Below are positions 4,248 to 60,087 of a stretch of DNA of 64,000 nt, piece after piece; positions within the stretch are counted from its first letter, which is position 1, and every line of letters begins with the position of its first letter. Below the pieces are notes generated by a model, which was not told the DNA's origin, did no database searches, and saw only the letters and a program-made list of their open reading frames with translations. Source of the stretch: Dendrobates tinctorius. Taxonomy: Eukaryota. The stretch is from NCBI RefSeq assembly GCF_039654945.1, contig NW_027361766.1:36890001-36954000 (forward strand), written 5' to 3'. The translations under genes and the position numbers were made by a program.

Positions 4248-4295
4248 CAGTCCGGCCACTTTACCACACTAGGACACTAGTAAGGTTGCTATCGA

Positions 4296-4334
4296 GCCTC
4301 CTGATGATCCCAGAGGGGTGAAACGCGTCGAGGC
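4296..4334 (+). ncRNA. Minimal type I hammerhead ribozyme with canonical core
   Basis: Stem I GCCTC/GAGGC, CUGAUGA, stem II CCC-AGA-GGG, GAAAC, palindromic ACGCGU stem III, GUC cleavage triplet at 4327-29. Confidence 0.85.
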
Positions 4335-10282: not shown

Positions 10283-10575
10283 TCATTCAAGAGCCTTTTG
10301 ATAAACAACATGTTTGGTTTTTCCTTTTGGTGCAAAGATGAACAGATTTTTGGCAGTTCCAACTCTTGAACAGATCACGTAAAGTTGACAATGAGAAAAG
10401 CATGGAGATTGCAAATCGATTCCTACTACTTACAAGGACTGTCCCTGAGCATTGTTAATGGACATTGCAAATAGCAGTTGAACTGGAAACTGGAGGCGTT
10501 TAAAATCAAAAAACAAATCAGATGGAATGAGTGGAATTCTTGGAATGAAAAGGTCCTGTCCTTTGGCACATCCTG
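10283..10575 (-). pseudogene. Pif1-like helicase C-terminus of Helitron RepHel
   Basis: Translates as FIPRIPLIPSD..FKRLQFPV..FAMSINNAQGQS..VGIDLQSPCFSHCQLYVICSRV..KTKHVVYQKALE*. Confidence 0.88.
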
Positions 10576-10579
10576 TTTC

Positions 10580-26166: not shown

Positions 26167-27425
26167 CTTTCTGTATTATGCTGGCATTTTAACCTCGCTT
26201 GTACTACATGGATTGGAGTGAATAAAAGAATCATATATTTTCACCACATCGTAGAACTGGACATTTTCTTCATTTTTGGTGTTACAAGCGCCCTGATACG
26301 GCGGCTCCTTGCTCCCGTGGTCAAGATGCGGTTTCTGGTGAGCTGGAATTTCTGATTTGTTTTGTGAGACTGCAGAGGATGATATAGAACATTCAATTTC
26401 CAGAGAATAACTTATGGGCATAATTTGGTGAATTCGAATTTTGGCAGAACCGCTCATCTCTAGTGTTTACCTGAACAATTTTGAATATGTTCTAATTTAT
26501 TCTCAATGTGGAAATAGCTGCACTCAGTGTAATTAACGTTCCTAAAGGGATCTCAAATGTTTCAAGTAAACTGGTACTTAAATTTAATTATTATTTATCA
26601 TCTTTTTTTTTAATGAGTCCCTTGTGGAGTAAGAGCAAAGACATATAACTATAAATACCAATGTTTTAGTCCTGCATCACATATGAACTATCACTCTACA
26701 CTGTATCGAGGGTAAGTTACCAATCATTACATTTGTAATGACATGGGATTGGAGATAGTGTTTTCTAAATATTCTCTGCCTTGAAGGACTAATGTTTTGT
26801 AATGTAGCAGCATATTATGATGATTACATATGAACAAAAAATGTAAATGAATGAACTCCTTGTTTTCTACTGTAACTTGCAATCTTCCAGCATTCCTTCT
26901 ACACTTTGCATTAGAGAAAGGAAGGAGTTAAAACAACCCGCATTTGACCTGCATCTTAAGCTAGTTAATGATGTAACATTATTTCTTTACATCTTCTGTA
27001 GAGTGAGTTACTAGACCTACAGTCAGCATGCTAGAAAACACTCATTGTGATAAATGCTATAGAAATAGATAAACCAACATTTTTTCACAGTCTCTCCTCT
27101 AATAGAAATGCGAAGATTAGAGTTAAGTGAATCTTTAAAAAATATTTTATTTATTTTCTAGCTGACGAATCAGACAGTTTGCTGCAAACCTAAATCTTGC
27201 AAACCATATTTATATATTTACTTTTTCATACTTCTATCTTAATAATTAACATCATACCAATTTTCTATCAGTCTCAAACTTGAGAAAACAATCGCATAGT
27301 TTCTATTCAGAGCTAAAGAAGGATTAGGAACCTGAAAAGCAATTATTAGCAATAGCATGCTCATTTCGCCTCTATGATGTATGTATTGCATTGATGTTTT
27401 TCTGTGGATAAAACAGCTCCATTAA

Positions 27426-27847
27426 GGGGAATCTGTCACATCATTTTTGGCCTATGAGATGCAGCCACCGCCATCAGGGGCTTATCTACAGCATTCTGTA
27501 ATGCTGTAGATAAGCCCCCGATGTAATCTGAAAGATAAGAAAAACGAGTTAGATTATACTTACCTGGGGGTGGTCCGGTCCGATGGGTGTCGCGGTCTGG
27601 TCTGGCGCCTCCCATCTTCTAGTAATGACGTCCTCCTCCTTACTTCTGCCACAGCTCCTGTGCAGGCGTAATATATCTGCCCTATTGAGGGCAGAGCAGA
27701 GTACTGCAGTGCGCAGGCGCCGGGAAAGGTCAGAAAGGTCCGGCACCTGAGCACTTGTGCACTGCAGTACTTTATAGAATGCTGTAGATAATCCCCTGAT
27801 GGTGGTGGCCGCATGTCATGAGGCAAAAATGAGGTGACAGATTCCCT
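27426..27847. mobile_element. T2/Kolobok-type MITE, copy A only
   Basis: TIR RGGGAATCTGTCAC, TTAA TSD; single TTAA at the empty site in copy B (51843-46). Confidence 0.9.
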
Positions 27848-28363
27848 TTAAGCATTTTCAGTGGGATCACCATTTTTTTCTTTTACATTCCATATATATT
27901 TGACAGAAGGAAAACCTCTGTCTATCTCTATGAAACTCGAGATGTATGGAAGTGCATTTGGAGCGCCAACGTGGATGAAGGATGCCATACAAAGGCTCCA
28001 AACTCCTTAGTTTTTCCTAGGCATTGCCCCACCATGTGCTTAGCTCCTTCATCACACAAAGTAATTTCACAAATATAAATAATCCAAATTTGTCAAAGAA
28101 AATCAAAAGGTCAATATAACAAAATTTAAATGATTTCCCAGATAGATACATATATACATACATATCTCCGCTGTAGAGGTTTACAACCTTTTTTTTACGC
28201 CTACTTGGGTGTTTGCTTTTTACTCGTAAATATTGGTATTGTTATTACTATAATTGCTATTTTATACAGCAGATGACATTTGCCGTGAATACTATGATAT
28301 GATAAAAATAAGTCTCCTCCTTTTTCAGGTTGCACAATTGTCAGCTTCCTCTGCAGATGCACA

Positions 28364-29305
28364 ATGGGGTTCCGCTTATTGATAAAATCTTTTGCTTTTG
28401 TTCTTCTTGTGGTTTTTGGTATCCCGGGAAATGTCTACATTGTGATCAAATTTTTGCACATTAGGATTTTGGAAAAGAAGCTCTTACCTACTAACACCAT
28501 ACTAATGACACTCTCAGTTGTTAACATTTTTGTGCTTCTGTCCCGTGTCATGTTACAGGCTCTGAACGCCATTGGATTAGAAAATATCTTGAATGATGGA
28601 GAATGCAGATTGTTTATCTTCACTTTTAGAGTTAGTAGAGCCATGTCGATTTGTGTAACCAGTTTGCTTAGCTGCCACCAGTGTATACTTATTGCACCAG
28701 CCAATAAAAAGTGGAAATACCTCAAACAAATAGTAAACCCAAATGTTTCAATTATATTGGCAATGCTTTTAGGAATGAACATGTCACTTTACCCTGCTGG
28801 TATTTTATATGGACGAGCACAATCCAATGATACCCTCTCACCGTACACATTGCGCCTAGCATACTGTGATGTTGACTTTCTAAACTATCTAACCTATATT
28901 ATTAATGGATTGGTATCTGCGGTTCGAGAAATTATATTTGTGGGATTAATGATCCTTTCCAGTACCTATATTGTATATGTTCTCCATAATCATGGTAAAG
29001 CCATGAAGGGAAAGCGCAGTTCAGACAAAGTACAAAACAAGACAATTGAGTATAAAGCTTCGAAAGCAGTCATTATGTTTGTCATAATGTATGGACTATT
29101 GTTTGGCATGGATAACTGCATGTGGATATATACTATAACTATGTCCAACGTAGGCTCTGATGTCAGTGACACTCGATTATTCCTTGCTGCCTCTTATGCA
29201 GTGCTGAGCCCATATCTAATTTTTGCTACTAACCCTAAAGTAAACCAAGGATTCAAAAACCCATTCAGAAGAGAAAGGATTGAAAGAAAAATAGGTATTT
29301 CTTGA
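28364..29305 (+). CDS. Vomeronasal type-1 receptor (V1R / ORA-like) GPCR, 313 aa, duplicate A
   Basis: Intact 7TM ORF with GIPGN, FRVSRAMSICVTSLLSCHQCILIAP..W.YLK and YAVLSP. Pyrimidine-rich acceptor ending at 28328. Confidence 0.96.
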   Translation: MGFRLLIKSFAFVLLVVFGIPGNVYIVIKFLHIRILEKKLLPTNTILMTLSVVNIFVLLSRVMLQALNAIGLENILNDGECRLFIFTFRVSRAMSICVTSLLSCHQCILIAPANKKWKYLKQIVNPNVSIILAMLLGMNMSLYPAGILYGRAQSNDTLSPYTLRLAYCDVDFLNYLTYIINGLVSAVREIIFVGLMILSSTYIVYVLHNHGKAMKGKRSSDKVQNKTIEYKASKAVIMFVIMYGLLFGMDNCMWIYTITMSNVGSDVSDTRLFLAASYAVLSPYLIFATNPKVNQGFKNPFRRERIERKIGIS

Positions 29306-29385
29306 CCAAGCAATTACCATTCTCAGATCATTACACTATTGTAGCGATTTAATTGCACTTTCTATTATACTGAAATAGAAGTTAA

Positions 29386-29759
29386 AGGGGTTGTCCATTA
29401 CTCTGACGGCCCTTCTCCATCCCTGTTTCCCCCCATTTGTGTCGGCACTGGCTCTCCTAGTGATTGTGTGACATTGTTATGTCACGCGATCTCTGTGGCC
29501 AATCAGCTTCCGTCACCCCTCCTTTGGACAAATAAAGACATCCGAAGGAATTCAGAGCAGCCACAGCTATCATTCGCTTTGGATGTTAATTATGTTCATA
29601 GGGGGAGAGTTAAGCCAGCTCTGATTGATTGAAAGCATCACGTGACACAACAATGATGGCAAGTCCCGACAACACTGGAATGGTGAGTAGAAGTGTTATT
29701 ATTTTACTTTGGAGAACCTACACATTGAGAAGGGATTGTCTGAGTAGTGGAAAACCCTT
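29386..29759. mobile_element. T2/Kolobok-type MITE just 3' of V1R copy A
   Basis: TTAA|AGGGGTTGTCCA...TGGAAAACCCTT|TTAA; also present in copy B at 53409-53781, so older than the duplication. Confidence 0.8.
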
Positions 29760-30662
29760 TTAATTTTCAATGGAAAAATGTAGAAGAGATACATTTGACA
29801 AATCCCTGAGAACTAGGTTTGTTATTTAACACAAGCATTATTGGTATGCAAGATTTTCACTGTGGCTTTATTCAGTGCCTATAGGGAACAGGTAACTATA
29901 CCATTTGTATATAGCCTGTGGACACAAGCCTCAGCACAATTGGTCTGACTAATATATCTGGTGTGGAGTAGGTTATCAGTAGACAATACCATTTCATATA
30001 ACTTATTATGCCAGTAGAAGGGGACAGCTAAGTTGTACCCTTTTTCTATGAGCCAGAAAAGAAATCTGCCTAAAGAATTGGTTTCCATAATGAGATTTGA
30101 GATAACCTTACAGTATATATAATGCTACACATAACACTTGTTGAAACTTCCCCTGGCAATAACATTTTTAAAATACTGTAGTTATCTTTGATGACAGCAT
30201 GATGTGTTAATAAATTGTGCTGCAATAAAAGATATACGTGTACATACTATTTCAGACAGAAGATCATTAGGAATTAGAAAAGCAGTTGTGAACAAAATGA
30301 AATACAGTAGAAAGCTACATGTAATAAATGTGGACATGTGATCTGTTACTGTGTTCAGGAAAGTTTTAATTGAATATGATGTTGTATGATGCTTAAAGGG
30401 TTTTCCCACAAGCAAATGTAATTTTAATCAATAAATTTAAAAAAAAATTCCACATTTGGTTGTGATTAAATAAAATGCTTCTGTCCTGAGATAATCTTAT
30501 AATGTGCCCCTGCTGTGTACTGTGTAATGGTTGTGTCTGACTGCACAGAATTTTGGTTTGATCATACTACATCTCCTGGGCAGGGGAGGAAGCAAAAGAG
30601 TATATAGAAATTACAGCATGGGATCACAAAGAATTCTTTCTTTGAGGTAAAACATAGCCTAA

Positions 30663-31232
30663 CCCCTTCACGACAAGCGCCATACTAGTACGGTACATAT
30701 CGTGTCTCCCCCTTTGATGTGGGCTTCAGCGGTGAGATCACTTCTTTTCCGGCACGTCAGCTGTTTTGAACAGCTGAAATATGCCCGGAACAGCTGTGGG
30801 TGGAATTGCGATCCACCCGAGGCTTTCAACCCGTTGAATGCTCCTGTCAAACTTTGACAGCAGCATTTAATGCTCGCTTCCGGCCATCAGGCCTGAAATT
30901 CGCTCATCGGTGTCCTTTGTCACGTGATCGTGGGTCACCGATGGGTTGGCATGACAACCAGAGGTCTCCTGGAGACCTCTATGGTCACTGACGGCTTGCT
31001 GTGATTGTCACCCGGCAGTCGGCGCTCATAGCAAGTGAGGTATTCTGCTACGTACAGGTGATCTGATCATCGCCTGTATGTAGCAGAGCAGATCGGGTTA
31101 TGGCAGCTTCTAGTCTTCCATGGAGACTTTTGAAGAATGCCAAATGTAAAAAAATATGTTTTAAAAAATATTAAAAAGATAAAAAAATACAAAAAGTTTA
31201 AATCCCCCCCCTTTTGCCCCATTCAAAATAAA
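30663..31232. mobile_element. Truncated piggyBac-type non-autonomous element inside an older T2 MITE (about 30397-31831)
   Basis: CCCCTTCACGAC terminus; matches the left half of 54729-55980. Confidence 0.72.
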
Positions 31233-31307
31233 TATTTTGCTTGGTCCTCTGCCCAGGAGCTGTGGTATGATCAGACCATGTCCCTGCACGGTCAGACACA
31301 GCCATTA

Positions 31308-31702
31308 GGGTACCGTTACACTTAGCGATGCACCAGTGATCCCGACCACGATATGACCTGGTCAGGATCGCTGATGCATCACTAAGTGGTCGCTAGTGAG
31401 CTGCCATACAGGCAGATCTCACCAGCGACATAGCAGCGGTCGGGGGTCGCTACTTACCTGTCAGACGAGGCGATCCTGACGTCCTCCTGCCCGCGTCCAC
31501 ACGTCGCTCGTCGGCACCACAGGAAGCCCAGCAGGAAGTGGCCGGCGAGAAGTGGCCCAGGACGTTCTCGCGCGATCAGCAATAATCAGCGGGGGAGCCG
31601 GTCGGAGGTAAGTATCACACATAGCGATATCGCTGCTGTGTCACAAAACCAGTGACATTACAGTGATATTGCTAGCGATATCGCTTAGGGTTAACGGGCC
31701 CA
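31308..31702. mobile_element. Harbinger-type MITE, copy A only
   Basis: TTA TSD (31305-07, 31703-05); empty site near 56054. Confidence 0.87.
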
Positions 31703-31846
31703 TTACACAAGACACAGCAGGGGCACATTTATAAGATTATCTCACCACAGGAAAAAAATTTTAAACACATCCAATTGTGAAATGTATGAAGATCTATTGA
31801 TTAGAATGAACTTTATTCATGGGACAACCCTTGAAGCTGTGACTAA

Positions 31847-32407
31847 AGCCCCCGTCACACACAGCACACCCCGTCACACAAGTTTTGTGACGCAGCAGCG
31901 ATCTCACCAGCGAGATCGCTGTGTGTGACACTTTACCAGTGACCAGCCCCCTGCCGGTTATCACTGATCATCCTGGAATGGCCAGGACATTTTTTTGATC
32001 TCTGGTCTCCTGCTGGCCAGCATGCATCGCTGCGTGTGACAGGCGACAGACCAGCGATCAGCGAGCAGGAACTGGTAACTAAGTTAAACAGAGGGTTTCT
32101 AAGCGGCGTGCAGCGCTTAGAAACCCGATGTGTACTTTAGTTACCAGCGCGCTGGTGCAGGGAGCTGGTAACCAAGGTACACATCGGGTTTCTAAGCGGT
32201 GTGTGGCATCAGCGCGCTGGTAACTAAGGTACACAGTGGGTAACTAAGCGACGTGCGTCGCTTGTTACCCCCGTGTTGCTGGTGCTGATCGCTGGTGAAG
32301 CTGCCTGTTTGGCAGCTCACCAGCGATCATATAGCGACACACCAGCGATCCTGACAAGGTCATATCGTTGCCGGATCGCTGGTGCATCGCTATGTGTGAC
32401 GGGGCCC
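31847..32407. mobile_element. Harbinger-type MITE, copy A only
   Basis: TIR RGSCCCCGTCACAC, TAA TSD; single TAA at the empty site near 56239. Confidence 0.9.
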
Positions 32408-33498
32408 TAAGTGTTAGTATAATTTTGATATGTATATATTACAGTCATAGCAGCTCATACCTGTTCACACTTATGTCATTCTATGAAGAGGTGCTGCTCA
32501 GATTTGGGCTACATTTATATCACATTTTTCCTGTACATCAGTGGTTGTCATGAGGCTTCCGTCTGAAGCCTTGAAAAATGGGATTTGGGTGGATCTGATG
32601 ATGGGACTATTGAGTTTAGTGGGCTACTGCACTTTTGTTCCATCCTCAAAAAGGTGGCCACTGACAAAAAGAATGTCATAGAAAGCTCTTTCTGCTTCAT
32701 TTAAAGTCAAATTCCCAGCCAGCAGTAACACCCGGAATCCTGCTCATCAGAACTTCAGGCACTAGTCCAGATGGTGCCATTGACGTGACAAAAATGCAAT
32801 GAGAACCTGGCCTTATTTTGAAGTTCAGTTGGAGGCAGTAAATACCTCAATAGTTTGCTTAACACTCCACAAATCAGTCTAAAGTTGTTTTTAATTTATG
32901 CTGTATCCTATCCTAAGCTTCTACCCCAGGAGAGGTTAGAGCACACACAAATTTGCCAAATTGGGCTCCAAGTATCCCAATTTTATAGGTATAGTATATA
33001 AGGCATAATAAATCTTGAAGTTCATATATTCAATGTTTACATGTATCAGTCCAACTTTTTCTTAAATATGCATATACTGCAATCACAACAGCTTGCATTC
33101 TGTTAGGATGTGCTGGTCAGTTTTGTTTTATGTAAGTTTATGTTCAAATGCTCAGTAGTTACTTTAATTTCTAGATCTGTTTTGGCATCATAAAAAGGGA
33201 AATAAAATGTTCCTGTACTGGATCCATTCATTTGATCATAACTGAAGGGTCTTAAAATATTTTTTTTTTGTTTGCCTCTTTTCCAGCTGCTGGTTTTTAT
33301 CTAGATCAAAAAACATAGTTTACACAACTTTTTTGTTTTGCCCAAATAAACAGAGAGCAACTGCATCCATGTAAATTTAAATATATGGGCAAAAGATTAT
33401 AACAGATGTTTTTCATTTTTTATTTTTTGCTTCATTTGCTCTATTTGAAATAGTTCATGTTTTTTTCAATGTTTGTTCTGAAGGGAAGAAGACCGGGC

Positions 33499-34196
33499 TG
33501 TGGCTACCAATGAGACACCGGGTCCGGAACTGCCGGGGTCACGTCCGGTGTTGCAGGGGGGAAGAAATGGGAGACGGAAAAAAAAACATGATCCAGAGAG
33601 AAGGGACATGACAAGAGAAGGGAGGAGAGAGGGTTTAGCGTGGGAAGAGGCAGAGAGTTCCCACTGGAGAGGAGAGAGAGCAGGGACCTGCTGTGTGCCG
33701 CAGAGAGAGTTTGACTGCACGTTAGTAAGAGAGAACAAGGGCAGCGTACGCAGACAGGGAGAGTGTAGTGCAGGACTCCCAACCACAGAGCACATTAAAC
33801 GGGAGGGTGTTGTGCAAAACTTCCGATTGCAGAACATGCCAAGTGGGAGAGTGTGGTGCAAAACTCCTGACTGCAGAGCATGCCTAGTGAGAGATTCTGG
33901 TAAAGGACTCCCAGCTGCATAGCAGCGTGATGAACTAGGGGCTCAATGGGTCAGACCGGTGAACGCCCGTTGCTGCCAGAAGAGTGAGCACTGAAGGTCT
34001 CAGTACCGGCATCAACTGGATCTCAAATTCCGTTTCTGGAGGAGTGAACAGCAACAGACTCATGATAAGTGAAGCAGTTAAATGCATAGACTGCGGCCCT
34101 GAGTTATACTGTTCTTCATGTCATTTAGCTTAAAAATCTGTTTAACTCCTGGCTGACTCCCTGTAAGGAGAACCCCTATTGTGTTAATTAAGCCAC
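33499..34196. repeat. Purine-rich LTR-like repeat (duplicate at about 57272-57968)
   Basis: TGTGGC...GCCACA ends and a composition shift, but no TSD. Confidence 0.4.
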
Positions 34197-37100
34197 ATCC
34201 TTGTTAACCCTTGCTCTGCACATCTGTGTTACTGCATCCTTTTACCTGCTTTACAGTTCCATTACAAATGGATGCCAACTGGATATGTGAACAGAGCTTC
34301 AGAAGCGCCATTCAATTACATATGGAAATAACTAGATATTGAACAAGCACACAGATTGGGACAATGACTGTTGAGAGTCATCTCTGAAAGCTGCCCATGG
34401 TGGAGGCTGATGATTTTGCAAGATTTCTAACAATTACATTTTCAGAGATTAGAAGTAAGGGAAGGTGAGCTGTTAATTGCTATATAGAAAACAGTGGACT
34501 ATAGAGAAGTGGCTAGTATGTTAAGAGTTAACTGTTCCACTGGAATGTAACTACTGCACATTTTTGGCCCGTGCCTAGGCAGGCATCAGTTTCTTTACTC
34601 CATTAAAACCTGCTGTATAAAAAAATAAAGCTCTAAAATTAATTGCAAAGTTGCTTATTTTTGATTTTTTTCTTAGATTTTAATTTTTGGAATAAAATAC
34701 ATTTATTTTAAGCAATGCAATACCTAATGTCTTTCTGTTCTAGTCAGTTATGTTAGAACTTTTGCACAGTCTATTTTGCATATGCTGTGTATGTATTGTG
34801 AAAGTGATTTAGATCCTGTGACTTGCTCTCTATTGTATCTATCCTTTATACACCTGAATATGTTACTGTTTTGAAAATTAATAAATCGGACTTGGAAGAA
34901 GAATGTTGGCAGATTTTTCAGTTCACTCAGGGCCAGTATTAGTCTCACCCCAGGAAAATTTAAAAGTGGTGCCCTGAATTCTAACATATAATCCCTTTAT
35001 GAAATCTCTATATATGCAGGGAAACATGCCTCCAACCGTTAAAAGAGTTTCCACTTTCATGAGAACTGACATTGTACCCGGGGAAGGTAAATACTGTGTC
35101 AATTTATTAATTTATATACCGGAAAATCCTGAAAGTAGAAATTCCTTATAATATTGAGATAGCTTAAAATCTAAAACAGCTGTACTGCAATAGCAAACCA
35201 AGAGTAGATTTTCTGTTTTATCTTAAAGGGTTTTCACATCTGAAAAAATTTTCAGCAAGCTCTGTAGCTTTCTGGTTCCTAGAGGTGTGCATTGAACACA
35301 ACGTTAGGTTTTGGATTCACTTGCCAGCTCTGGCGGTTATAACTCAACCACAAGTATGCAATGTACAGTTATGTGCCTTCTACATTCTCAGCTGCTTCTC
35401 TCAATAGAACTCAATGACCCTTTATAGGAAGGAGGGAGTGGTCACACCTGCTGACTGATCAAATATGTAATAACACCAGCAGCCACCGGGGGGGGCAACC
35501 CAGCCGCAGACTCACTAAGCTTGTAGTAAAACCAGTGGCCACCGGGGCAAAACCCATATTAACCCCCGAGGGCCAGAAAGGAAAAAGGTAAGAGTCCAGA
35601 CTTTGACAGATCCAAAAATCCCAGCGCTGCGTCTCCTGCTGTTTTTTTACATAAACAATGGCACGTGGCTGTTGAAAGGCTGCAGTCATTCCTATTCTAT
35701 CAAAGTCGAAGAATAGTGAAGGCTGCAGCTAGTCAGCAGTTGCTGAATTAATAGAGGTCATGTGATATTGATGTCATGATGCTGATACATAACAGCACTG
35801 TGATCATAGGAATAGCGCCAGTATGGGAGGTAAGTGTAGAGTGTATTTTGTGCTGCACCTTGGGACTAAGAAGAAAGGGTAGTCCAGTAGTGGACAACTA
35901 CTTTAATAATTTATGAAATCTTCTCTTGGCTTGTTTTTGATAAACACCCTTTTGTAAAGGTTATAGTACCTCTCTTTTCTTGGGTTTTTCCACTTTCATG
36001 GTTCTCCCCTGTAATGGCTAGCACTCAGTGTTCAGAAGATTTGTTCCTGATTATTAGCCCATGTAAACATGCCAGTGATAATATAAACTGATGAATAAGC
36101 AAAAACACTGAATTATTTATGACAAATCATTAAAAATCATGGCTATTGACTGCACATTGCACGGTGTACACAGAGGGTGGACTGCTAGTAACTAGAATGA
36201 GTATGTGGTGACATACAGTATTAATAATTTTTGTGTTGTCATCATTTCTTAATGATTCATGAAAACAAGCTAGAAAATAAGTGCTGATCGAATTGTATAA
36301 AGCCAGTCTGCACTCATTACTAGGTCAAAATCAGCAATAATTGAAAATACAGGGTGGCCTAAAAGTCACAAGACTACTTAAAAATAGAATAACTATAGTG
36401 TGTATTAAACATGCACAGTTATTATTTTACAAGCAATAAATATACTTCTTGGAAATTATTTTTATTTAGTTTTGTAGGTTATGACTGTAAGCTTGGCTAA
36501 GTGTGGAGGCCAATAGAATTCAGAGTTTCGTGAAATTATCTGCAGTCAAAAAATTTGTCTTACGATTACGTTTTGTGCCTCATTCTCAAATAAGGGCCAA
36601 GAACTCTTTATCTGCTTAAACCGCACCAAACCGTTACTTTTATGCCTCTCTCTTACATTAATAAAACAGATAGTTTTTTTGTACATTTGTGGAAAAGTCA
36701 CATTTGCAAATGTGAAACTTGACTACCATGATAAGGAAAGCTTACAACCTGTATTTTGGCTGCAGAATAGGGGATCAGGACAAAAGTTGGGCTCCACACA
36801 TACTACAATCTTATGCTTTTCTGCATTTCTAATTATCTGCATAAAGCCAACCAATCACACTACCAATTGCAATTTCTCTATGATGCACTCCATTAAAAGG
36901 AGTTTCAAGGAAGAAGCGAAATTTATAGTATCCAAACAGTCCATCTGCAATACACCCAGTACCATATACAGATGAACTGCTGGCTCCAAAAGCACCAGAA
37001 ACACTTTCAGTTGAGTCAAGTGATGAAATGATTCCTGTCATGATGCATCTTCCTCTCACAGCACAGATTTTCTATAGGCAAGCTCAACTAAACCACAACT

Positions 37101-41750: not shown

Positions 41751-41819
41751 GGGATTACAGTTCAGGTGGTAGAAGCATGAACACAACAGGAGACCTGGAT
41801 ACTGTTGCCAACCAATTAT

Positions 41820-44800: not shown

Positions 44801-45097
44801 TTTGGCAGGTGGTGAAGAGACAGATGGTTGCTCTTCAGTGCTCTGGACCTGAGAGTATATGGAAGTAATTGAAATCGATGCGTTAGGTGCCATCCATCCG
44901 ACAACGGCTTCAATTTGTTCGTCCCGCAGCAGTGGGGTACGGTGAGCTCGTACAAAGCTGCTCATAAAGGACTGTTCCCTGGTAAAACTGGGGGATGCTG
45001 AGTCACTGGTGCCTGCAGCATGCACAGAATCCCCACGTCCTCTCCCTGCTGAAACTCCACGCCCATGACCACGTGCCTTACTCCCTGCCTTCTTCAT
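41820..45097 (-). pseudogene. BED-finger hAT transposase (ZBED-like) pseudogene
   Basis: BED finger WSFF..CKLC..MWKHVQTKH, VHLTTNAW (first catalytic D changed to N), CDNG, CLAH, TRWNS, LLDPR and dimerisation domain. The SERVFS segment with the catalytic E is deleted near 41948; several stops and frameshifts. Confidence 0.93.
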
Positions 45098-46084
45098 CTT
45101 GGTAGACTGATAAAGATAGGCAGAAAAGTACCAAGGGCTTAGTGTGCTTATTCCTGAACAGCTGCTAACAGGTATAAGAAACACTAATTTTATAAAGTGT
45201 GGATTACACTTTAATATGAGCTAATGTGGCCCACACAACTGTAAAGTGGAATGTTTGGTGAACTTTATTTACGTGTTTTTTTATACAAAAAAAAAGGATG
45301 TGACCAAAGATGTAAAAGCGATAGTATCACAAACTTTTTGTAGCTATTACAATGCAGGAAGGTAACCTACAATGCAATAAATGAGGCTACAAAAAATAGG
45401 CTAATACTAATCTGGCTGGGGCTGCAGGGCACAAGCCAGCAGAAAGGCTCCTCTATCTACTCCTATATAGTGTTTGCATCCAATCTAGCTGGATACGGAT
45501 GGTAGCACACTAATAGGAGAAATTCAGGAAAAATAAGCAGCACTACAGCAAAAAAGGACAATGAATGAGGCAGTGACGCACGCTGAGCGGACTACAACCA
45601 GGGGTGGCTGCAGAACACACTACAGCGTGAGCTGCACTCACACACAGAGACTTCACAGACAGCTGTGAACAGTGCAGAGAACTGTGCACTAGCACTGAAA
45701 GGCTGCAAAAAGGCTCCTCTATCTACTCCTATATAGTGTTTGCAACCAATGCAGATGGATACGGATGGAAGCACACTAATAGGAGAAATTCAGGAAATAT
45801 AAGTAGCACTACAGCAAAAAAAGACAATGTATGAGGCAGTGATGCACGCTGAGCGGACTACAACCAGAGGTGGCAGCAGAACACACTACAGTGTGAGCTG
45901 CACTCACACACACAGACCTTGCAGACAGCTGTGAACAGCGCTGCAAGGCAAAATAAAGCTTCACACAGCGCTTGCTAAAGTAGCCTGGCTAAAGCACAAT
46001 ATAGCAAATCGCTATCTCAAACTGTCCCTCAGAGTCAAAACAGCAGCGTCCTGTCCCTAACTGAATTCACAGCAGAGTGAACAA

Positions 46085-50680: not shown

Positions 50681-52363
50681 TGCCCATATATATGTAATAT
50701 CTCATTGCTCACCTCTGCTGTATAAATCACTGGAGATATGTATATACCTATATCTCCTAAGTGTTTATTATGATCTGGTCTTTGCTGATACTGCAGAGGA
50801 TGATATAGAACATTCAATTTCCAGAGAATAACTTATGGGCATAATTTGGTGAATTCGAATTTTGGCAGAACTGCTCATCTCTAGTGTTTACATGAACAAT
50901 TTTGAATATGTTCTAATTTATTCTCAATGTACAAATAGCTGCACCTAGTGTAATTAACATTCCTAAAGGGATCTCAAATGTTTCAAGTAAACTGGTACTT
51001 AAATTTAATTATTATTTTTCATCTTTTTTTTTTAATGAGTCCCTTGTGGAGTAAGAGCAAAGACATACAACTATAAATACCAATGTTTTAGTCCTGCATC
51101 ACATATGAACTATCACTCTACACTGTATCGAGGGTAAGTTACCAATCATTACATTTGTAGTGACATGGGATTGGAGATAGTGTTTTCTGAATATTCTCTG
51201 CCTTGAAGTTCTAATGTTTTGTAATGTAGCAGCATATTATGATGATTGCATATGAACAAAAAATGTAAATGAATGAACTCATTATTTGCTACTGTAACTT
51301 GCAATCTTCCAGTGTTCCTTCTACACTTTGCATTAGAGAAAGGAAGGAGTTAAAACAACCCGTATTTAACCTGCATCTAAGCTAGTTAATGATGTAACAT
51401 TTTTTCTTTACATCTTCTGTAGAGTGAGTTACTAGACCTACAGTCAGTATGCTAGAAAACACTCATTGTGATAAATGCTATAGAAATAGATAAACCAACA
51501 TTTTTTCACAATCTCTCCTCTAATAGAAATACCAAGATTAGAGTTAAGTGAATCTTTACAAATATTTTATATCTTTTCTAGCTGATGAATCAGAACAGTT
51601 TGCTATAAATCCAAATCTTGAAAACCATATTTATATACTTACTTTTTCATTCTTCTATCTTAATAATTAACATCATACCAATTTTCAATCAGTCTCAACC
51701 TTGGGAAAACAATTGCATAGTTTCTATTCAGAGCTAAAGAAGAATTAGGAACCTGAAAAGCAATTATTAGCAATAGCATGCTCATTTTACCTCCATGATG
51801 TACGAATTGCATTGATGTTTTTCTGTGGGTACAACAGCTCCATTAAGCATTATCAGTGGGATCACCATTTTTTTTCTTTTACCAAGCAATAACCATTCCA
51901 TATGTATTTGACGGAAGTAAAACCTCTGTCTATCTCTATGAAACTCGAGATGTATGGAAGTGCATTTGGAGCGCCAACGTGGATGAAGGATGCCATACAA
52001 AGGCTCCAAACTCCTTAGTTTTTCCTAGGCATTGCCCCACCATGTGCTTAGCTCCTTCATCACACAAAGTAATTTCACAAATATAAATAATCCAATTTTG
52101 TCAAAGATAATCAAAAGCTCAACATAACAAAATTTAAATGATTTCCCAGATAGATACAATATACAGTCTCCGTTGTAGAAGTTTACAACCTTTTTTACGC
52201 CTACTTGGGTGTTTGCTTTTTACTCATAAATATTAGTATTGTTATTACTATAATTGCTATTTGATACAGTAGATTACATTTGCCGTGAATATTATGATAT
52301 GATAAAAATAAGTCTCCTCCTTTTTCAGGTTGCACAATTGTCAGCTTCCTCTGCAGATGCACA

Positions 52364-53305
52364 ATGGAGATCCGTTTATTGATAAAATCTTTTGCTTTTG
52401 TTCTTCTTGTGGTTTTTGGTATCCCGGGAAATGTCTACATTGCAATCAAATTTTTGCACATTAGGATTTTGGAAAAAAAGCTCTTACCTACTAACACCAT
52501 ACTAATGACACTCTCAGTTGTTAACATTTTTGTGCTTCTGTCCCGTGTCATGTTACAGGCTCTGAACGCCATTGGATTAGAAAATATCTTGAATGATGGA
52601 GAATGCAGATTGTTTATCTTCACTTTTAGAGTTAGTAGAGCCATGTCGATTTGTGTAACCAGTTTGCTTAGCTGCCACCAGTGTATACTTATTGCACCAG
52701 CCAATAAAAAGTGGAAATACCTCAAACAAATAGTAAACCCAAATGTTTCAATTATATTGGCAATGCTTTTAGGAATGAACATGTCACTTTACCCCTCTAG
52801 TATTTTATATGGACGAGCACAATCCAATGATACCCTCTCACCGTACACATTGCGCCTAGCATACTGTGATGTTGACTTTCTAAACTATCTAACCTATATT
52901 ATTAATGGATTGGTATCTGCGGTTCGAGAAATTATATTTGTGGGGTTAATGATCCTTTCCAGTACCTATATTGTATATGTTCTCCATAATCATGGTAAAG
53001 CCATGAAGGGAAAGCGCAGTTCAGACAAAGTACAAAACAAGACAATTGAGTACAAAGCTTCGAAAGCAGTCATTATGTTGGTCATAATGTATGGACTATT
53101 GTTTGGCATGGATAACTGCATGTGGATATATACTATAACTATGTCCAACGTAGGCTCTGATGTCAGTGACACTCGATTATTCCTTGCTGCCTCTTATGCA
53201 GTGCTGAGCCCATATCTAATTTTTGCTACTAATCCTAAAGTGAACCAAGGATTCAAAAACCCATTCAGAACAGAGAGGATTGAAAGAAAAATCGGCATTT
53301 CTTGA
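52364..53305 (+). CDS. Vomeronasal type-1 receptor (V1R / ORA-like) GPCR, 313 aa, duplicate B
   Basis: Intact ORF; 18 nt and 7 aa differences from 28364-29305. Confidence 0.96.
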   Translation: MEIRLLIKSFAFVLLVVFGIPGNVYIAIKFLHIRILEKKLLPTNTILMTLSVVNIFVLLSRVMLQALNAIGLENILNDGECRLFIFTFRVSRAMSICVTSLLSCHQCILIAPANKKWKYLKQIVNPNVSIILAMLLGMNMSLYPSSILYGRAQSNDTLSPYTLRLAYCDVDFLNYLTYIINGLVSAVREIIFVGLMILSSTYIVYVLHNHGKAMKGKRSSDKVQNKTIEYKASKAVIMLVIMYGLLFGMDNCMWIYTITMSNVGSDVSDTRLFLAASYAVLSPYLIFATNPKVNQGFKNPFRTERIERKIGIS

Positions 53306-53408
53306 GCACTTAGAGCAGGCTCAAGATACCAAGCAATAACCATTTTCATATCATTACTCAATTATAAAGACTTAATTGCAATTTCTATTATACTGAAATA
53401 GAAGTTAA

Positions 53409-53781
53409 AGGGGTTGTCAATTACCCTGACAGCCCTTCTCCATCCCTGTTTCCCCCATTTGTGTCAGCACTGGATCTCCTAGTGATTGCGTGACATTGTT
53501 ATGTCTCGCGATCTCTGAGGCCAATCAGCTTCACTCACCCCTCCTTTGGACAAATTAAGACATCAGGAGGAAGTGAGGGCAGCCACAGCTATCAATTGCT
53601 TTGGAAGTCAATTATGTTCATAGGGGGGAGAGTGAAGACAGCTATGTTTGATTGCAGGCATCGCATGACATAACAATGATGTCCAGTGCCGACAACACTG
53701 CAACAGTGAGTAGAAGTGTTATTATTTTACTTGGGAGAACCTACACATTGAGAAGGGAGTGTCCGAGTAGTGGAAAACCCT
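53409..53781. mobile_element. T2/Kolobok-type MITE just 3' of V1R copy B
   Basis: Paralogue of 29386-29759. Confidence 0.78.
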
Positions 53782-54728
53782 TATAGTCTTCAATGGAAAA
53801 ATGTAGAAGATATACATTTGACAAATCCCTGAGAACAAGGTTTGTTATTTATCACAGGCATTATTGGAATAATAACATTTTTACTGTGGCTTTTGTTCAG
53901 TGCCTATAGGGAACAGGTAACTATACCATTTGTTTGGAAAAATAGGTATATTACTCTGTGGTTGGAACAGAGATATGCAGCCCGTTTACACCAGCCTCAG
54001 CACAATTGGTCTGACTAATATATCTGGTGTTAAGGATGTTGTCAGTAGACAATACCATTTCATATAACTTAATTGGCCAGTAGAAGGCGACAGCTAAGTT
54101 GGACCCTTTTTCTATGAGCCAGAAAAGAAATCCGCCTGTAGAATTGGTTTCCATAATGAGATTTGAGATAACCTTATATACAGTATAACACTACACATAA
54201 CACTTGTTAAAACTTCCCTTGGCAATAACATTTTTCAGTAGTTATCTTTGATGACAGCATTATGTGTTCCTACATTGTGTTGCAATAAATAATTTTATAT
54301 GCGTACATACTATTTCAGGCAGAAGATCATTAGGAATTAGAAAAGTAGTTGAGAACAAAATGAAATAGAAAGTTACATGTAATAAAGGTGGACATGTGAT
54401 CCGTTACTGTGTTCAGGAAAGTTTTAATTAAACATGATGCTGTATGAAGCTTAAAATGTTTTTTCCACAAACAAAGGTAATTTTAATCAATAGATTTAAA
54501 AATAAAACAAATTCCACAATTGGTTTTGATTAAATAAAATGTTTCTGTCCTGAGATAATCTTATAATGTGCCCCTACTGTGTACTGTGTAGTGGTTGTGT
54601 CTGACAGCACAGGATTATGGTTTCATCACACTACATCTCCTGGGCAGGGGAGGAAGCAAAAGAGAGTGTACAGGCATTACAGCACAGGATCACAAAGAAT
54701 TCTTTCTTTGAGGCAAAACATAGCCTAG

Positions 54729-55980
54729 CCCCTTCACGACATGTGCCATACTAGTATGTTGCATGTCATCTCTCCCCCTTTGAGGTGAGCTCCGGCGGTG
54801 AGACCACATCTTTTCAGGCACATGTCAGAGGTTTTGAACAGCTGAAATGTGCCCGGAACAGCTGCGGTTGGAATCGCAATTCACATGAGGCTTTTAACCT
54901 GTTAAATGCCCCTGTCAAACTTTGACAGCAGTGTTTAATGCTCGCTTCCAGCCATCAGGCAGGTAATTCACCCATCGGTGACCCCCATCACGTGATCGCG
55001 GGTCACCGATGGGTTGGCATGACAACCAGAGGTCTCCTGGAGATCTCTATGGTTGTCACTGATGGCTTGCTGTGATTGTCGCCCGGTTGTTAGTGCTTAT
55101 AGCAAGTGAGGTATTCTGCTACGTACAGGTGATCTGATCATCGCCTGTATGTAGCAGCGCCGATCGGATTATGGCAGCTTCTAGTCTTCCATGGAGATTA
55201 TTGAAGCATGCCAAACATCTAAAAAAAAATTTAAAAATATTAAAAAGATAAAAAATATAAAAGTTTAAATCACCCCCCTTTCGTCCCATTCAAAATAAAA
55301 CAACAAAAAAAAACAAAAAAACATACACATATTTGGTAGCGCCGTGTTCAGAATCGCCTGATCTATTAATAAAATAAAAGGATTAACCAATTGCTATACG
55401 GCGTAGTGAGAAAAAAGGTAAAATTCCAGAACTTTTTTTGGTCGCAACGACATTGTATTAAAATTCAATAACAGGCGATGAAAAGATTGTATGTGCACCA
55501 AAATGGTATGAATAAAAACGTCAGCTTAGCTTGCAAAAAATAAGGCTTCACCCAACCCGACATCACGAAAAATGGAGACGCCACGGGTCTCGGAAAATGG
55601 CACAGTTTTTTTTTTTTTTACAAACTTTGGATTTTTTTCACCACTTAAATAAAAGAGAACTTAGACATGTTTGGTGCCTATGAACTCATAATGACCTGGA
55701 GAATCATAACGGAAGGTCATTCTTATCATTTGGCGAACATGGTAGAAAAAAAAAGTGGAATTGCACTTTTTTTTGCAATTTCACCACACTTGGAATGTTT
55801 TTCCCATTTGTGAGTATACTATATTGTAAAACCAATGATGTTGTTCAAAAGTACAACTTGTCCCGCAAAAAAGCCCTCACATGGCTATATTGACGAAAAA
55901 CTAAAAAAGTTATGACTCTGGGAAGAAGGGAGCTAAAAAACAAAAGCGCAAAAATGAAAAAGGGCCATGTCTTGAAGGGG
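54729..55980. mobile_element. piggyBac-type non-autonomous element
   Basis: CCCCTTCACGACATG...CATGTCTTGAAGGGG TIRs; TTAA on the right, degenerate CTAG on the left. Confidence 0.82.
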
Positions 55981-56136
55981 TTAATAACTGACAGGGTAAT
56001 GCTTTTCTTTACAAAAAGAAGCAGCTGTGATCCCTGCACAGTACGACATAGCCACTACACAAGACACAGCAGGGGCACATTTATAAGATTATCTCAACGC
56101 AGGAAAAAATGTTTTAAACACATCAAATTGTGAAAC

Positions 56137-56183
<47 letters not shown>
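56137..56183. repeat. (TTA)n microsatellite, copy B only
   Basis: About 15 TTA units; not expanded at the equivalent position in copy A (near 31783). Confidence 0.95.
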
Positions 56184-56185
<2 letters not shown>

Positions 56186-59100
56186 GATCTATTGATTAGA
56201 ATGAACTTTGTTCTTGGGACAACCCTTGAAGCTGTTACTAAGGGTTAGAATAATTTTGATATGTATATATTACAGTCATAGCACCTCACATTTTGGATTT
56301 GGGTTGATCTGATGATGGGACGATTGAGTTTAGTGGGCTACTGCGCTTTTGTGCCCTCATCAAAAAGGTGGCCACTGACAAAAAGGAAATCAGAGAAAGC
56401 TCTTTCTGCTTCATTTAAAGTCAAATTCCTAGCCAGCAGTTACACCCGAATCTTGTTTGTCAGAACTTCAGGCACTAATCAAGATGGTGCCATTGACGTG
56501 ACAAAAATGCAATGTGAACCTGCCCTTATTTTGAATTTCAGTTGGAGGCAATATCTTCTTCAATAGATGGCTTAACACTCCACAAGTCAGTCTAAAGTTG
56601 TTTTTAATTTATGCTGTATCCTATCCTAAACTTCTACCCCAGGAGAGGTTAGAGTGCACACACAGATTTGCCAAATTGGGCTCTAAATACCCCAATTTTA
56701 TAAGTATATTCTATAAGGCATAATTAATCTAGAAGATCATATATTCAATGTTTACATGTATCAGTCCATAAAGTGTGTTGATGCACTTTTTTAAATATGC
56801 AATACTGCTACCACAACAGCTTGCATCTGTTCATTTCTGCTTCATTCTATTAGGATGTGCTGGTCAGTTTTGTTTTATGTAAGGGCGAGGGTAGGCATTA
56901 TATGTGTTAGTTTATGTTGAAATGTCCAGTAGTTACTTTAATTTCTGGATCTGTTTTGGCATCATCAAAAGTTGAAATAAAATGTTCCTGTACTAGATCC
57001 ATTCATTTGAACACAACTGAAGGGTCTTAAAATGTTTTTTTTGCCTCTTTTCCAGATGCTTGTTTTTATCTAGATCAAAAAGTGTAGTCTGCACAACTTT
57101 TTTGTTCGGCCCAAGTAAAGAGATAGCAACTGCATCCATTTAAATTTAAATTTATAAGCAAAAGATTATAACAGATGTTTTGCTTTTTTTTATTTGTTTT
57201 TTCTTCATTTGCTCCTTTTGAAATAGTTTAAGTTTTTTTCAATGCTTGTTCTGTAAGGGAGAAGACCGGGCTGTGGGTACCAATAAGACACCGGGTCCGG
57301 AACTGTCGGGGTCACGTCCGGTGTTGCGGGGGGAAGAAATGGGAGGAGGAAAGAACCCATGATCCAGAGAGAAGGGGCATGGCAAGTGAGGGGAGGAGAG
57401 AGGGTTTAGTGTGGTAAGAGGCAGAGAGTTCCCGCCGGAGAGGAGGGAGAGCAGGGACTTGCTGCGCTCCGCAGGGAGAGTTAGACCGCACGTTAGTGAG
57501 AGAGAACAATGGCAGCGTACGCCAACCGGGAGAGTGTAGTGCAGGACTCCCAACCACAGAGCACATTAAACAGGAGGGTGTTGTGCAAAATTTCAGATTG
57601 GAGAACATGCCAAGTGGGAGAGTGTGGTGCAAAACTCCTGACTGTAGAGCATGCCTAGTGAGAGATTCTGGTAAAGGACTCCCAGCTGCAGAGCAGAGTG
57701 ATGAACTAGGGGCTCAATGGGTCAGACGGGTGACCGCCTGTTGCCGCCAGAAGAGTGAGCACTGAAGGTCTGAGTACCGGCATCGACCGCATCTCAACTT
57801 CTGTTTCTGGAGGAGTGAACAGCAACAGACTCACGATGAGTGAAGCAGTTGAATGCATAGATTGTGGCCCTGAGTTATACTGCTCTTCTTGTTATTTAGC
57901 TTAAAAATCTGTTTAACTCCTGGTTGGCTCCCTGTGAGGAGAACCCCTATTGTGTTAATTATGCCACATCCTTGCTAACCCTTGCACTGTGCCTCTGTGC
58001 TACTGCATCCTTTTACCTGCTTTACAGTTCCATTACAAATGGATGCCAACTTGATACGTGAACAGAGCTTAACATGCTCGAGTCAATTACATATGGAAAT
58101 AACTAGATATTGGACAAGCACACAGATTGGGACAATGACTGTTGAGAGTCATCTCTGAAAGCTGCCGATGGTGGTGGCTGATGATTTTGCAAGATTTCTA
58201 ACAATTACTTTTTCAGAGATAAGAAGTAAAGGAAGGAGGGGAAAGAGGTGAGCTGTTAATTGCTGTATAGAAATCAGTGGGCTGTAGAGAAGTGGCTAGT
58301 ATGTTAAGAGTTAACTGTTCCACTGGAATGTAACTACTACACAGTTTTGACCAGTGGTTTGGCAGGCGTCAGTTGCTTTACTCCATTAAAACTTGCTATA
58401 TAAAATATTAAAGCTGTAAAATTAACTGCAAAGTTGCTTATTTATGTTTTTTTCTTAGATTTTTATTTTTTGGAATAAAATACATTTATTATAAGCAATG
58501 CAATACCTAATGTCTTTCAGTTCTAGTCAGCTATGTTAGAACTTTTGCACAGTCCATTTTGCTTATGCTGTGCATGTATTGTGAAAGTGATTTAGATCCT
58601 GTGACTTGCACTCTATTGTATCTATCCTTTATACACCTGAATATGTTACTGTTTTGAAAATTAATAAATTGGACTTGGAAGAAGAATGTTGGCAGATTTT
58701 TCATTTCAGTCAGGGCCAGTATTAGCCTCACCCCAGGAAAATTTAAAAGTGGTGCCCTGAATTCTAACATATAATCCCTTTATGACCTCTCTATAACTTG
58801 CCTCCAACCATTAAAAGAGTTTTCCACTTTCATGAGAACTGGCATTATACCCGGGGAAGGTAAACACCATGTCAATTTATTAATTTATTTAGTGGAAAAT
58901 CCTGAAAGTAGAAATTCCTTATAATATTGAGCTAGCTTAGCTTAAAATCTAAAACAGCTGTACTGCAATAGCAAACCAAGAGTAGATTTCCTGTTTTATC
59001 TTAAAGGGTTTTTCACACTTGAATAAATTTTCAGCAAGCTCTGTAGCACCGGACCACAGAGTTAGGCACGAGAAAGGGAAATAGCTGGAGCTCCACTGTA

Positions 59101-59443
59101 ACACAGCTTGCTCCTGACTCCAGCTTTGTTGTGGAATAATATCACCATCAGTGAGTGCAGCACCTGATGACCCTTTATAGGAAGGAGGGAGTGGTCACAC
59201 CTGCTGACTGATCAAACATGTAATAACACCAGCAGCCACCGGGGGGGAACCCAGCCGAAGACTCACTAAGCATGTAGTAATCCAAGCGGCCACCGGGGGC
59301 AAAAACCCATATTAACCCCTGAGGGCCAGAAAGGAAAAAGGTAAGAGTCCAGACTCTGACAGATCCAAAGATGGATCGTGACACTAATTTTGTGTTCAGT
59401 ATTCCTCTCTAAAATTCAGCAATCTACAGCCAAAAATTTCCTG

Positions 59444-59810
59444 AGGGGTTGTCCACTACTTAACAATCGCTTCTTAAAATCTCAAGGAATCAGTATAAAA
59501 TTAACTTAATAAATATCTCCAATCCCAGCGCTTTGTCTCCTGCTGTTTTTTTACATAAACAATGGCACATGGCTGTTGAATGGCTGCAGTCTTTCCTATT
59601 CTATCAAAGTCGAAGAATAGTGACAGCTGCAGCTAGTCAGCAGCTGCTGAATTAATAGAGGTCACGTGATATTGATGATGTCATGATGCTTATACATAAC
59701 AGCACTGTGATCATAGGAATAGCACCAGTATGGGAGGTAAGTGTAGAGTGTATTTTGTGCTGCACCTTGGGACTAAGAAGAAAGAGCAGTCCAGTAGTGG
59801 ACAACCACTT
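59444..59810. mobile_element. T2/Kolobok-type MITE (left part deleted in copy A, 35617-35905)
   Basis: AGGGGTTGTCCACTACT...AGTAGTGGACAACCACT|TTAA. Confidence 0.7.
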
Positions 59811-60087
59811 TAATAATTTATGAAATCCTCTCTTGGCTTGTTTTTGATAAGCACCCTTTTGTAAAGGTTATAGTACGTCTCTTTTCTTGGGTTTTCCACT
59901 TTCATGGTTCTCCCCTGTAATGGCTAGCACTCAGTGTTCAGAAGGTTTGTTCCTGATTATTAGCCCACGCAAACATACCAGTGATAATATAAACTGATGA
60001 ATGAGCAAAAACACTGAAGTATTTATGACAAATCATTAAAAATCATTGCTATTGGCAGCAAATTGCATGGTGTACACAGAGGGTTGC

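What the first reader, a model, noticed from the sequence alone, without database searches (positions are those of the whole stretch)
51880..53344. Exact 18-bp direct repeat brackets the coding cassette of V1R copy B
Seen: TACCAAGCAATAACCATT occurs at 51880-97 and 53327-44, enclosing about 465 nt of leader, the whole CDS and 21 nt of 3' sequence. Copy B also has a 23-nt hairpin-forming insert at the stop (TCTTGAGC...GCTCAAGA). Copy A has only the downstream repeat (29305-21, one mismatch); it lacks 12 nt of the upstream one (TTTTAC^ATTCC near 27886) and lacks the hairpin. Inference 1: the repeat is a TSD, so the receptor cassette was itself mobilised. It has no poly(A) tail and seems to retain an intron, which fits Penelope-type mobilisation better than L1 retrocopying; PLE TSDs in this window are 12-16 bp. 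Inference 2: a microhomology template switch (AC in, CATT out) copied 12 nt from 1.4 kb downstream in B only.
Basis: partly seen in the sequence, partly recalled or inferred. Interest (0 to 1): 0.72.

Follow-up and report, generated by a model that had tools for sequence, protein, structure and literature searches.

The report
Templated 12-nt insertion scar beside frog V1R
The exact 18-base repeat around one of two tandem poison-frog V1R pheromone-receptor genes is real, but it is most likely a small repair or replication scar in which 12 bases were copied from the gene's own 3' flank, not evidence that the gene jumped.

Summary
TACCAAGCAATAACCATT is exact at 51880-97 and 53327-44. Copy A has a near-copy only downstream, lacks 12 nt upstream, and lacks 23 nt at the stop codon.

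The mobilisation reading (a target-site duplication, TSD) is not supported:
- A and B are two arms of a ~10-kb tandem segmental duplication. Homology runs more than 1 kb upstream and more than 6 kb downstream of the 18-mers.
- The "cassette" ends have no poly(A) tail, no polyadenylation signal, no terminal inverted repeats and no hammerhead or Penelope-like element (PLE) feature.
- A-B divergence shows no step at the 18-mers.

New result: the Ranitomeya imitator orthologue ends ...NRHFLST*. That is copy B read one frame over, through the "hairpin insert", and not copy A. The 23 nt are therefore ancestral, and A carries a deletion.

The 18-mer breaks down as 3 nt (TAC), 12 inserted nt and 3 nt (ATT). 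This is the signature of a microhomology-primed templated insertion copied in direct orientation from 1,447 bp downstream.

Whether the insertion is specific to B could not be tested. An ancestral repeat with a 12-nt deletion in A remains possible at roughly 20%, and a true TSD at about 5%. This is an ordinary mutational scar of low interest.

The parts
51880..51897 (+). Upstream 18-mer. TAC (51880-82) and ATT (51895-97) are native and shared with copy A. The 12 nt CAAGCAATAACC (51883-94) are absent from copy A.
53327..53344 (+). Downstream 18-mer, the presumed template, 22 nt after the stop codon. Copy A has it at 29304-29321 with 2 mismatches.
53300..53326 (+). Hairpin-forming segment TCTTGAGC-N11-GCTCAAGA that contains the TGA stop (53303-05). 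The 23 nt at 53306-53328 are missing from copy A and are inferred to be ancestral.
52364..53305 (+). V1R copy B CDS, 313 aa, intact.
51898..52363 (+). Leader of copy B, 466 nt. It holds a patch with no A-B substitutions at 51919-52095 and a splice-acceptor-like tract ending at 52328.
28364..29305 (+). V1R copy A CDS, 313 aa. It differs from B at 18 of 942 nt (dN 0.010, dS 0.055).
27884..27889 (+). Copy A upstream site TAC|ATT, without the 12 nt.
26361..36178 (+). Arm A of the tandem segmental duplication. It is interrupted by an A-only MITE at 27427-27844.
50781..60084 (+). Arm B of the tandem segmental duplication. The period is about 24.4 kb and substitution divergence from A is 4.7-9.2%.

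Best explanation
The two V1R genes arose by a ~10-kb tandem segmental duplication in a dendrobatid frog lineage, after its split from Ranitomeya. Later, in copy B only, a break or a stalled fork occurred in the leader between TAC and ATT. It was resolved by a microhomology-primed template switch. The 3' end ...TTTTAC annealed to the TAC lying 1,447 bp downstream on the same chromosome, just past the stop-codon hairpin. About 15 nt were copied (CAAGCAATAACC plus ATT), and the new end re-annealed through ATT to the original site. The outcome is a 12-nt templated insertion, which with its two 3-nt microhomologies reads as an exact 18-bp direct repeat. It works like the direct-repeat class of polymerase-theta templated insertions, or like a FoSTeS/MMBIR-type replicative template switch. 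Independently, copy A lost 23 nt immediately after its stop codon; that segment is ancestral. Shown here: the repeat, its 3+12+3 anatomy, the segmental duplication, and the ancestral state of the 23 nt. Inferred: that the 12 nt are derived in B, and which enzymatic pathway acted.
For: The repeat is exact and not due to chance. A 12-mer with 3+3 matching flanks within 3 kb on either side is expected about 2e-7 times. Sister copy A has the site without the 12 nt, and both junctions carry exactly 3 nt of identity to the donor flanks. Of 10 A/B indels of 8 nt or more in 7,975 aligned bases, only this one has an exact copy nearby. A/B homology runs 26361-36178 versus 50781-60084, far beyond the 18-mers. 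Identity is 93.3% in the upstream flank, 94.9% in the leader and 88.9% in the downstream flank, with no step at the repeat ends. No poly(A) tail, no AATAAA or ATTAAA, no hammerhead ribozyme and no other Rfam family occur at or in the cassette. B-up equals B-down, while A-down carries the single substitution. That pattern is guaranteed under recent copying and has probability 1/3 or less under an old repeat. The R. imitator C-terminus ERKNRHFLST* equals the +1 frame of B through TTG AGC ACT TAG and not that of A. A and B are sisters, with R. imitator and then P. terribilis outside (support 94/94). From the literature, Pol-theta templated insertions are 3-30 bp, AT-rich, primed at short microhomology, and the direct-repeat class is copied from the opposite resected end (PMC7165422; PMC4490562).
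Against: The polarity of the 12-nt indel was not tested against any outgroup DNA. Reported Pol-theta and MMBIR templated insertions use templates within tens to about 100 bp, whereas here the template lies 1,447 bp away. Both large A/B indels near the gene touch an 18-mer copy, a coincidence of about 5% that this model leaves to chance. 18/18 identity alone dates the event only weakly: P(no change) is 0.17-0.45 even if the repeat predates the duplication.
Confidence: 0.62

Rival explanations
1. The two 18-mers are older than the A/B duplication, and copy A later lost the central 12 nt of its upstream copy by a small deletion. The origin of the old repeat is left open.
For: Copy A demonstrably suffered a deletion at the other 18-mer: the 23 nt are ancestral by the R. 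imitator C-terminus. Two deletions in A, each touching one repeat copy, is a symmetrical story. 18/18 identity is not improbable even for an old repeat (P 0.17-0.45).
Against: It requires a deletion of 8 nt or more (1.25 per kb) to fall on an 18-nt target and lie wholly inside it (about 0.04 x 0.24). It also requires the one substitution among the three surviving copies to fall on A-down (1/3 or less). If the old repeat was itself a templated insertion, the deletion in A would have to excise it precisely.
Confidence: 0.2
2. One reading: the 18-mers are a target-site duplication, and the leader-plus-CDS cassette was mobilised as a unit (Penelope-type, L1-type or DNA-mediated) before the segmental duplication. 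Copy A then eroded.
For: An exact 18-bp direct repeat brackets a complete gene unit. The length falls within the range of LINE-type TSDs (established knowledge). A weak reverse-transcriptase fragment lies elsewhere in the window, at 23769-24458.
Against: The cassette has no poly(A) tail, no polyadenylation signal before its 3' end and only 21 nt of 3' sequence. It has no TIRs and no hammerhead or other Rfam hit. No empty site is seen. A/B homology and divergence continue smoothly across both boundaries. V1R copy C has no such bracket. All penalties of the 'deletion in A' model also apply.
Confidence: 0.05
3. Assembly artefact: the 12 nt upstream are a consensus or polishing error.
For: No reads could be examined.
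Against: A random error would not reproduce 12 nt from 1.4 kb away with matching junctions. The neighbouring sequence is not low-complexity apart from a T-run.
Confidence: 0.03

Closest known systems
Polymerase-theta-mediated end joining templated insertions (TINS), direct-repeat class (PMC7165422; PMC4490562)
   Same: The insert falls in the 3-30 bp range and is AT-rich. It is identical to cis sequence on the other side of the presumed break, in direct orientation, with short microhomology at the priming and resolving junctions.
   Different: Described templates lie within tens of bases of the break. Here the template is 1,447 bp away, which would need kilobase resection or a replicative switch. 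No enzyme dependence can be shown from sequence.
Replicative template switching (FoSTeS/MMBIR templated insertions, PMC8421209; short-range template switches, PMC5453318, PMC7954356)
   Same: A transient switch to a nearby template at microhomology, followed by a return. These events are found as germline variants and fixed differences.
   Different: The catalogued short-range events are mostly inverted copies within about 100 bp. This one is a direct copy from 1.4 kb away and has no accompanying rearrangement.
Target-site duplications of LINE or Penelope-like retrotransposition
   Same: A direct repeat of 12-20 bp flanks a discrete segment.
   Different: There is no tail, no element sequence, no ribozyme and no empty site. 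The flanked segment sits inside a larger DNA-level duplication.
Tandem segmental duplication of vertebrate V1R/ORA genes
   Same: Two intact, selected paralogues (omega 0.18) lie in the same orientation 24 kb apart within duplicated flanks. This is the usual birth mode of the family (established knowledge).
   Different: Nothing unusual.

Membership tests
TSD of a retro-mobilised (L1/PLE-type) cassette | Direct repeats immediately flanking the inserted segment | tested here: met
   18/18 at 51880-97 and 53327-44
TSD of a retro-mobilised (L1/PLE-type) cassette | 3' end of the insert carries a poly(A) or element tail (for PLE, pLTR or hammerhead sequences) | tested here: not met
   The insert ends ...GGCTCAAGA. 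There is no A-run and no AATAAA or ATTAAA, and no Rfam hit at gathering score or at E<=1.
TSD of a retro-mobilised (L1/PLE-type) cassette | Similarity between copies ends at the repeat boundaries, or an empty site exists | tested here: not met
   A/B homology continues more than 1 kb upstream and more than 6 kb downstream. No empty site occurs in the window. Orthologous sites could not be read.
TSD of a retro-mobilised (L1/PLE-type) cassette | Both repeat copies present in outgroup orthologues | not testable with these tools
   No DNA was returned for the R. imitator or P. terribilis loci.
Microhomology-mediated templated insertion (TMEJ / template switch) | Inserted bases identical to a cis template | tested here: met
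   12/12 identity to 53330-53341. It is the only one of 10 large indels with such a copy.
Microhomology-mediated templated insertion (TMEJ / template switch) | Microhomology between the insertion site and the template flanks at both junctions | tested here: met
   TAC on the left and ATT on the right are shared by the copy-A empty state and the donor flanks.
Microhomology-mediated templated insertion (TMEJ / template switch) | The insertion is the derived state | tested here: inconclusive
   Sister paralogue A lacks it, but no outgroup DNA was available. Indirect likelihood arguments favour derivation in B.
Microhomology-mediated templated insertion (TMEJ / template switch) | Template local to the break (tens to about 100 bp), as in the catalogued classes | tested here: not met
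   The start-to-start distance is 1,447 bp, against the ranges given in PMC7165422 and PMC8421209.
V1R / ORA receptor family | Full-length match to Pfam PF03402 above the gathering score, with an intact ORF | tested here: met
   131 and 130 bits against a cutoff of 25. Identity is 89-94% to the P. terribilis and R. imitator proteins named by NCBI as olfactory receptor class A-like protein 1.

The most novel reading that the evidence does not exclude
The 18-mers are a genuine, pre-duplication target-site duplication. That would mean a complete V1R promoter/leader-plus-CDS unit was once inserted as a discrete cassette by a mechanism leaving no tail or element sequence, and that copy A has since eroded both repeat copies.
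Probability: 0.05. Interest if true: 0.6.

Novelty: new member of a known kind. Interest (0 to 1): 0.15.

Why it matters
The finding has little importance beyond the locus. It is a clean, datable example of a direct-orientation templated insertion whose donor lies 1.4 kb away, further than the ranges usually scanned for such events. It therefore shows that short exact repeats bracketing a gene can be repair scars rather than TSDs. It also shows that the tail of a frameshifted orthologous protein can polarise a non-coding indel when orthologous DNA is out of reach. For V1R evolution, it confirms ordinary birth by tandem segmental duplication, with both copies under purifying selection.

Tried and rejected
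- Fetching orthologous DNA for R. imitator (P0122), P. terribilis (P0123) and the window's own gene with the look-up of encoding contigs returned no DNA, because the assembly files are too large.
- A search with the N-terminal 150 aa, meant to catch fragmentary Logan contigs of other dendrobatids, found none.
- A metagenome scan with a 26-mer from the invariant leader patch and a metagenome protein-guided scan both found nothing.
- Hammerhead or PLE features were sought with Rfam on the whole window and, permissively, on 51600-53700. No hit was found.
- Helitron, TIR and L1 hallmarks at the cassette ends were inspected by eye and rejected.
- Bracket repeats around the third V1R (copy C) were sought and none was found.
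- 'The cassette is younger than its flanks' (wholesale conversion or re-insertion) is rejected. Divergence inside the bracket is mosaic: 0/177, then 6.6%, then 1.3%, then 8%. dS of 0.055 matches the upstream flank.
- The bacterial promoter scan is irrelevant to a frog gene.

Full report
**Observation**

The 18-mer TACCAAGCAATAACCATT occurs exactly at 51880-51897 and 53327-53344. The only other match with up to 2 mismatches in the window is 29304-29321. The expected number of matches was 0.01, and none of 100 shuffles reached three. In the 4.5-kb block around copy B it is the only 100%-identical direct repeat of 14 nt or more.

The repeat encloses 466 nt of leader, a 942-nt ORF (52364-53305) and 21 nt after the stop codon. 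The ORF and its twin at 28364-29305 are intact V1R receptors (PF03402, 131 and 130 bits).
- Upstream, A reads ...CTTTTAC|ATTCC... at 27884-27889 and lacks CAAGCAATAACC.
- At the stop codon, A lacks 23 nt.
- In B those 23 nt complete an 8-bp stem, TCTTGAGC/GCTCAAGA, at 53300-07 and 53319-26. As DNA it folds at -6.7 kcal/mol, z = -2.6.

**Context**

A self-comparison shows that A and B are arms of a tandem segmental duplication. A 26361-36178 matches B 50781-60084 in the same orientation with a period of about 24.4 kb. The only break near the upstream 18-mer is a 418-bp element with 80-nt terminal inverted repeats, inserted in A only at 27427-27844.

Substitution divergence is 4.7%, 7.3% and 9.2% in the three collinear blocks. 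Around the gene, identity is 93.3% in the upstream flank, 94.9% in the leader, 98.1% in the CDS and 88.9% in the downstream flank. For the CDS, dN is 0.010, dS is 0.055 and omega is 0.18, so both genes are under purifying selection.

Position by position, divergence inside the bracket is mosaic:

| B coordinates | Substitutions | Note |
|---|---|---|
| 51919-52095 | 0 of 177 | invariant patch in the leader |
| 52096-52292 | 13 of 197 | plus indels |
| 52293-53232 | 12 of 940 | most of the CDS |
| 53233-53304 | 6 of 72 | end of the CDS |

There is no step at either 18-mer that would mark the bracketed segment as a unit with its own history. The flanks have no other copy in the window.

**Organism and outgroups**

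The protein falls in a 90%-identity cluster with orthologues of Ranitomeya imitator (XP_069615872.1, 316 aa) and Phyllobates terribilis (XP_073525273.1, 313 aa). The next hit is a hylid at 76%. The window is therefore from a dendrobatid frog.

A maximum-likelihood tree gives (P. terribilis, (R. imitator, (A, B))) with 94/94 support for A+B. All eight A/B amino-acid differences are private to one copy, and four derived residues are shared by A and B. The duplication therefore post-dates the split from Ranitomeya, unless the copies have been fully homogenised.

**The 23-nt segment is ancestral**

The R. imitator protein ends ...RIERKNRHFLST, whereas A, B and P. terribilis end ...ERKIGIS. Reading copy B one frame over from the A-run gives KKNRHFLST followed by a stop, through TTG AGC ACT TAG. 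That reading runs through the first 9 nt of the supposed insert. The same frame of copy A gives KKNRYFLTKQLPF....

So R. imitator carries the B state after the stop codon. The "hairpin insert" is ancestral, and copy A has a 23-nt deletion with 1 nt of junctional ambiguity that spares the TGA. It also means the TA at the start of the downstream 18-mer is old sequence.

**What the 18-mer is**

Using the copy-A state as the empty site, the upstream 18-mer breaks down as native TAC, then 12 extra nt, then native ATT. The donor downstream reads ...GA-TAC-CAAGCAATAACC-ATT-TTC. The identity therefore stops exactly 3 nt beyond the insert on each side. A chance origin is excluded: about 2e-7 such matches are expected within 3 kb on either side.

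This 3+12+3 anatomy is what a microhomology-primed templated insertion produces. A 3' end ...TAC anneals to the TAC 1,447 bp away, about 15 nt are copied, and the new ATT end re-anneals at the original site. The direct orientation, with the donor on the far side of the presumed break, matches the "intermolecular" direct-repeat class of polymerase-theta templated insertions. Those insertions are 3-30 bp and AT-rich (PMC7165422; germline role in PMC4490562). A replicative switch of the FoSTeS/MMBIR type (PMC8421209; PMC5453318) would give the same product.

The distance is atypical. The catalogued classes use templates within tens to about 100 bp. Among the 10 A/B indels of 8 nt or more in 7,975 aligned bases, this is the only one with an exact nearby copy. 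It is a one-off, not a local habit.

**Against a TSD and mobilisation**

- The copies share DNA far outside the bracket, so the gene pair was not made by moving the cassette.
- The cassette's 3' end lies 21 nt after the stop codon. It has no A-run, no AATAAA or ATTAAA, no terminal inverted repeat and no Helitron-like end.
- Rfam finds no hammerhead ribozyme or any other family, either in the whole window at gathering score or in 51600-53700 at E<=1.
- The third V1R in the window (5973-6848, 55% amino-acid identity) has no bracketing repeat.
- A pre-duplication TSD needs further coincidences. A deletion of 8 nt or more in A (1.25 per kb) would have to land on the 18-mer and stay wholly inside it. 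The single substitution among the three surviving copies would also have to fall on A-down.

**What remains open**

The decisive test is the state of the upstream site in outgroup DNA, together with read support. It could not be run:
- The look-up of encoding contigs returned no DNA for any of the frog assemblies.
- Fragment and metagenome searches found nothing.

Perfect 18/18 identity is only weak evidence of youth, with P = 0.17-0.45 for no change even if the repeat is older than the duplication. It is also a mild coincidence (about 5%) that the A-specific 23-nt deletion abuts the donor 18-mer. The adjacent hairpin may make this spot break-prone or exposed as single strand, but that is speculation.

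**Verdict**

| Reading | Probability |
|---|---|
| 12-nt templated insertion specific to B | about 0.62 |
| Ancestral repeat with a 12-nt deletion in A | about 0.20 |
| True TSD of a mobilised cassette | about 0.05 |
| Assembly artefact | about 0.03 |

It is an ordinary mutational scar in an ordinary tandem V1R duplicate, and interest is low.

Noticed in passing
window 51919-52095 (copy A 27911-28087): This 177-nt patch of the leader has no A/B substitution, although neighbouring sequence differs by 5-10% (P <= 4e-4). It contains a 27-codon uORF (ATGAAACTCGAG...TAG). It could be a constrained promoter or 5' exon, or a recent short gene-conversion tract.
   Followed up: partly
window 27427-27844: A 418-bp non-autonomous element with about 80-nt terminal inverted repeats (GGGAATCTGTCAC...) is inserted only in copy A, 40 nt upstream of the 18-mer site. 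The flanks read TTAAG on both sides.
   Followed up: partly
P0122 (Ranitomeya imitator XP_069615872.1), C-terminus: The orthologue is read one frame over from an A-run 25 nt before the normal stop, giving a 316-aa protein ending NRHFLST. This is either a real frameshift or a homopolymer error in that assembly.
   Followed up: partly
window 1785-2629 and 4248-5092: An 845-bp inverted repeat at 99.3% identity, with arms separated by 1.6 kb, lies just upstream of the third V1R gene (5973-6848).
   Followed up: no
window 5865-6932: A third intact V1R ORF (PF03402, 145 bits) is 55% identical in amino acids to A and B. It has no DNA-level similarity to them in its flanks.
   Followed up: partly
window 43955-45184 (-) and 23769-24458 (+): One ORF carries a BED zinc finger (E 9e-8). 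Another shows a weak reverse-transcriptase fragment (RVT_1, below the gathering score). Both are probably transposon remnants in the spacer between and before the two arms.
   Followed up: no
window 10570-11390, 16835-17977 / 19482-20575, 38457-41753: Three satellite-like tandem arrays are present. The second pair lie in inverted orientation to each other, at about 66% identity.
   Followed up: no
alignment A3, columns 185-186: A and B share Ser-Ala with the hylid and myobatrachid outgroups, whereas R. imitator and P. terribilis share Tyr-Val. This conflicts with the tree and hints at parallel change or past conversion from another paralogue.
   Followed up: no
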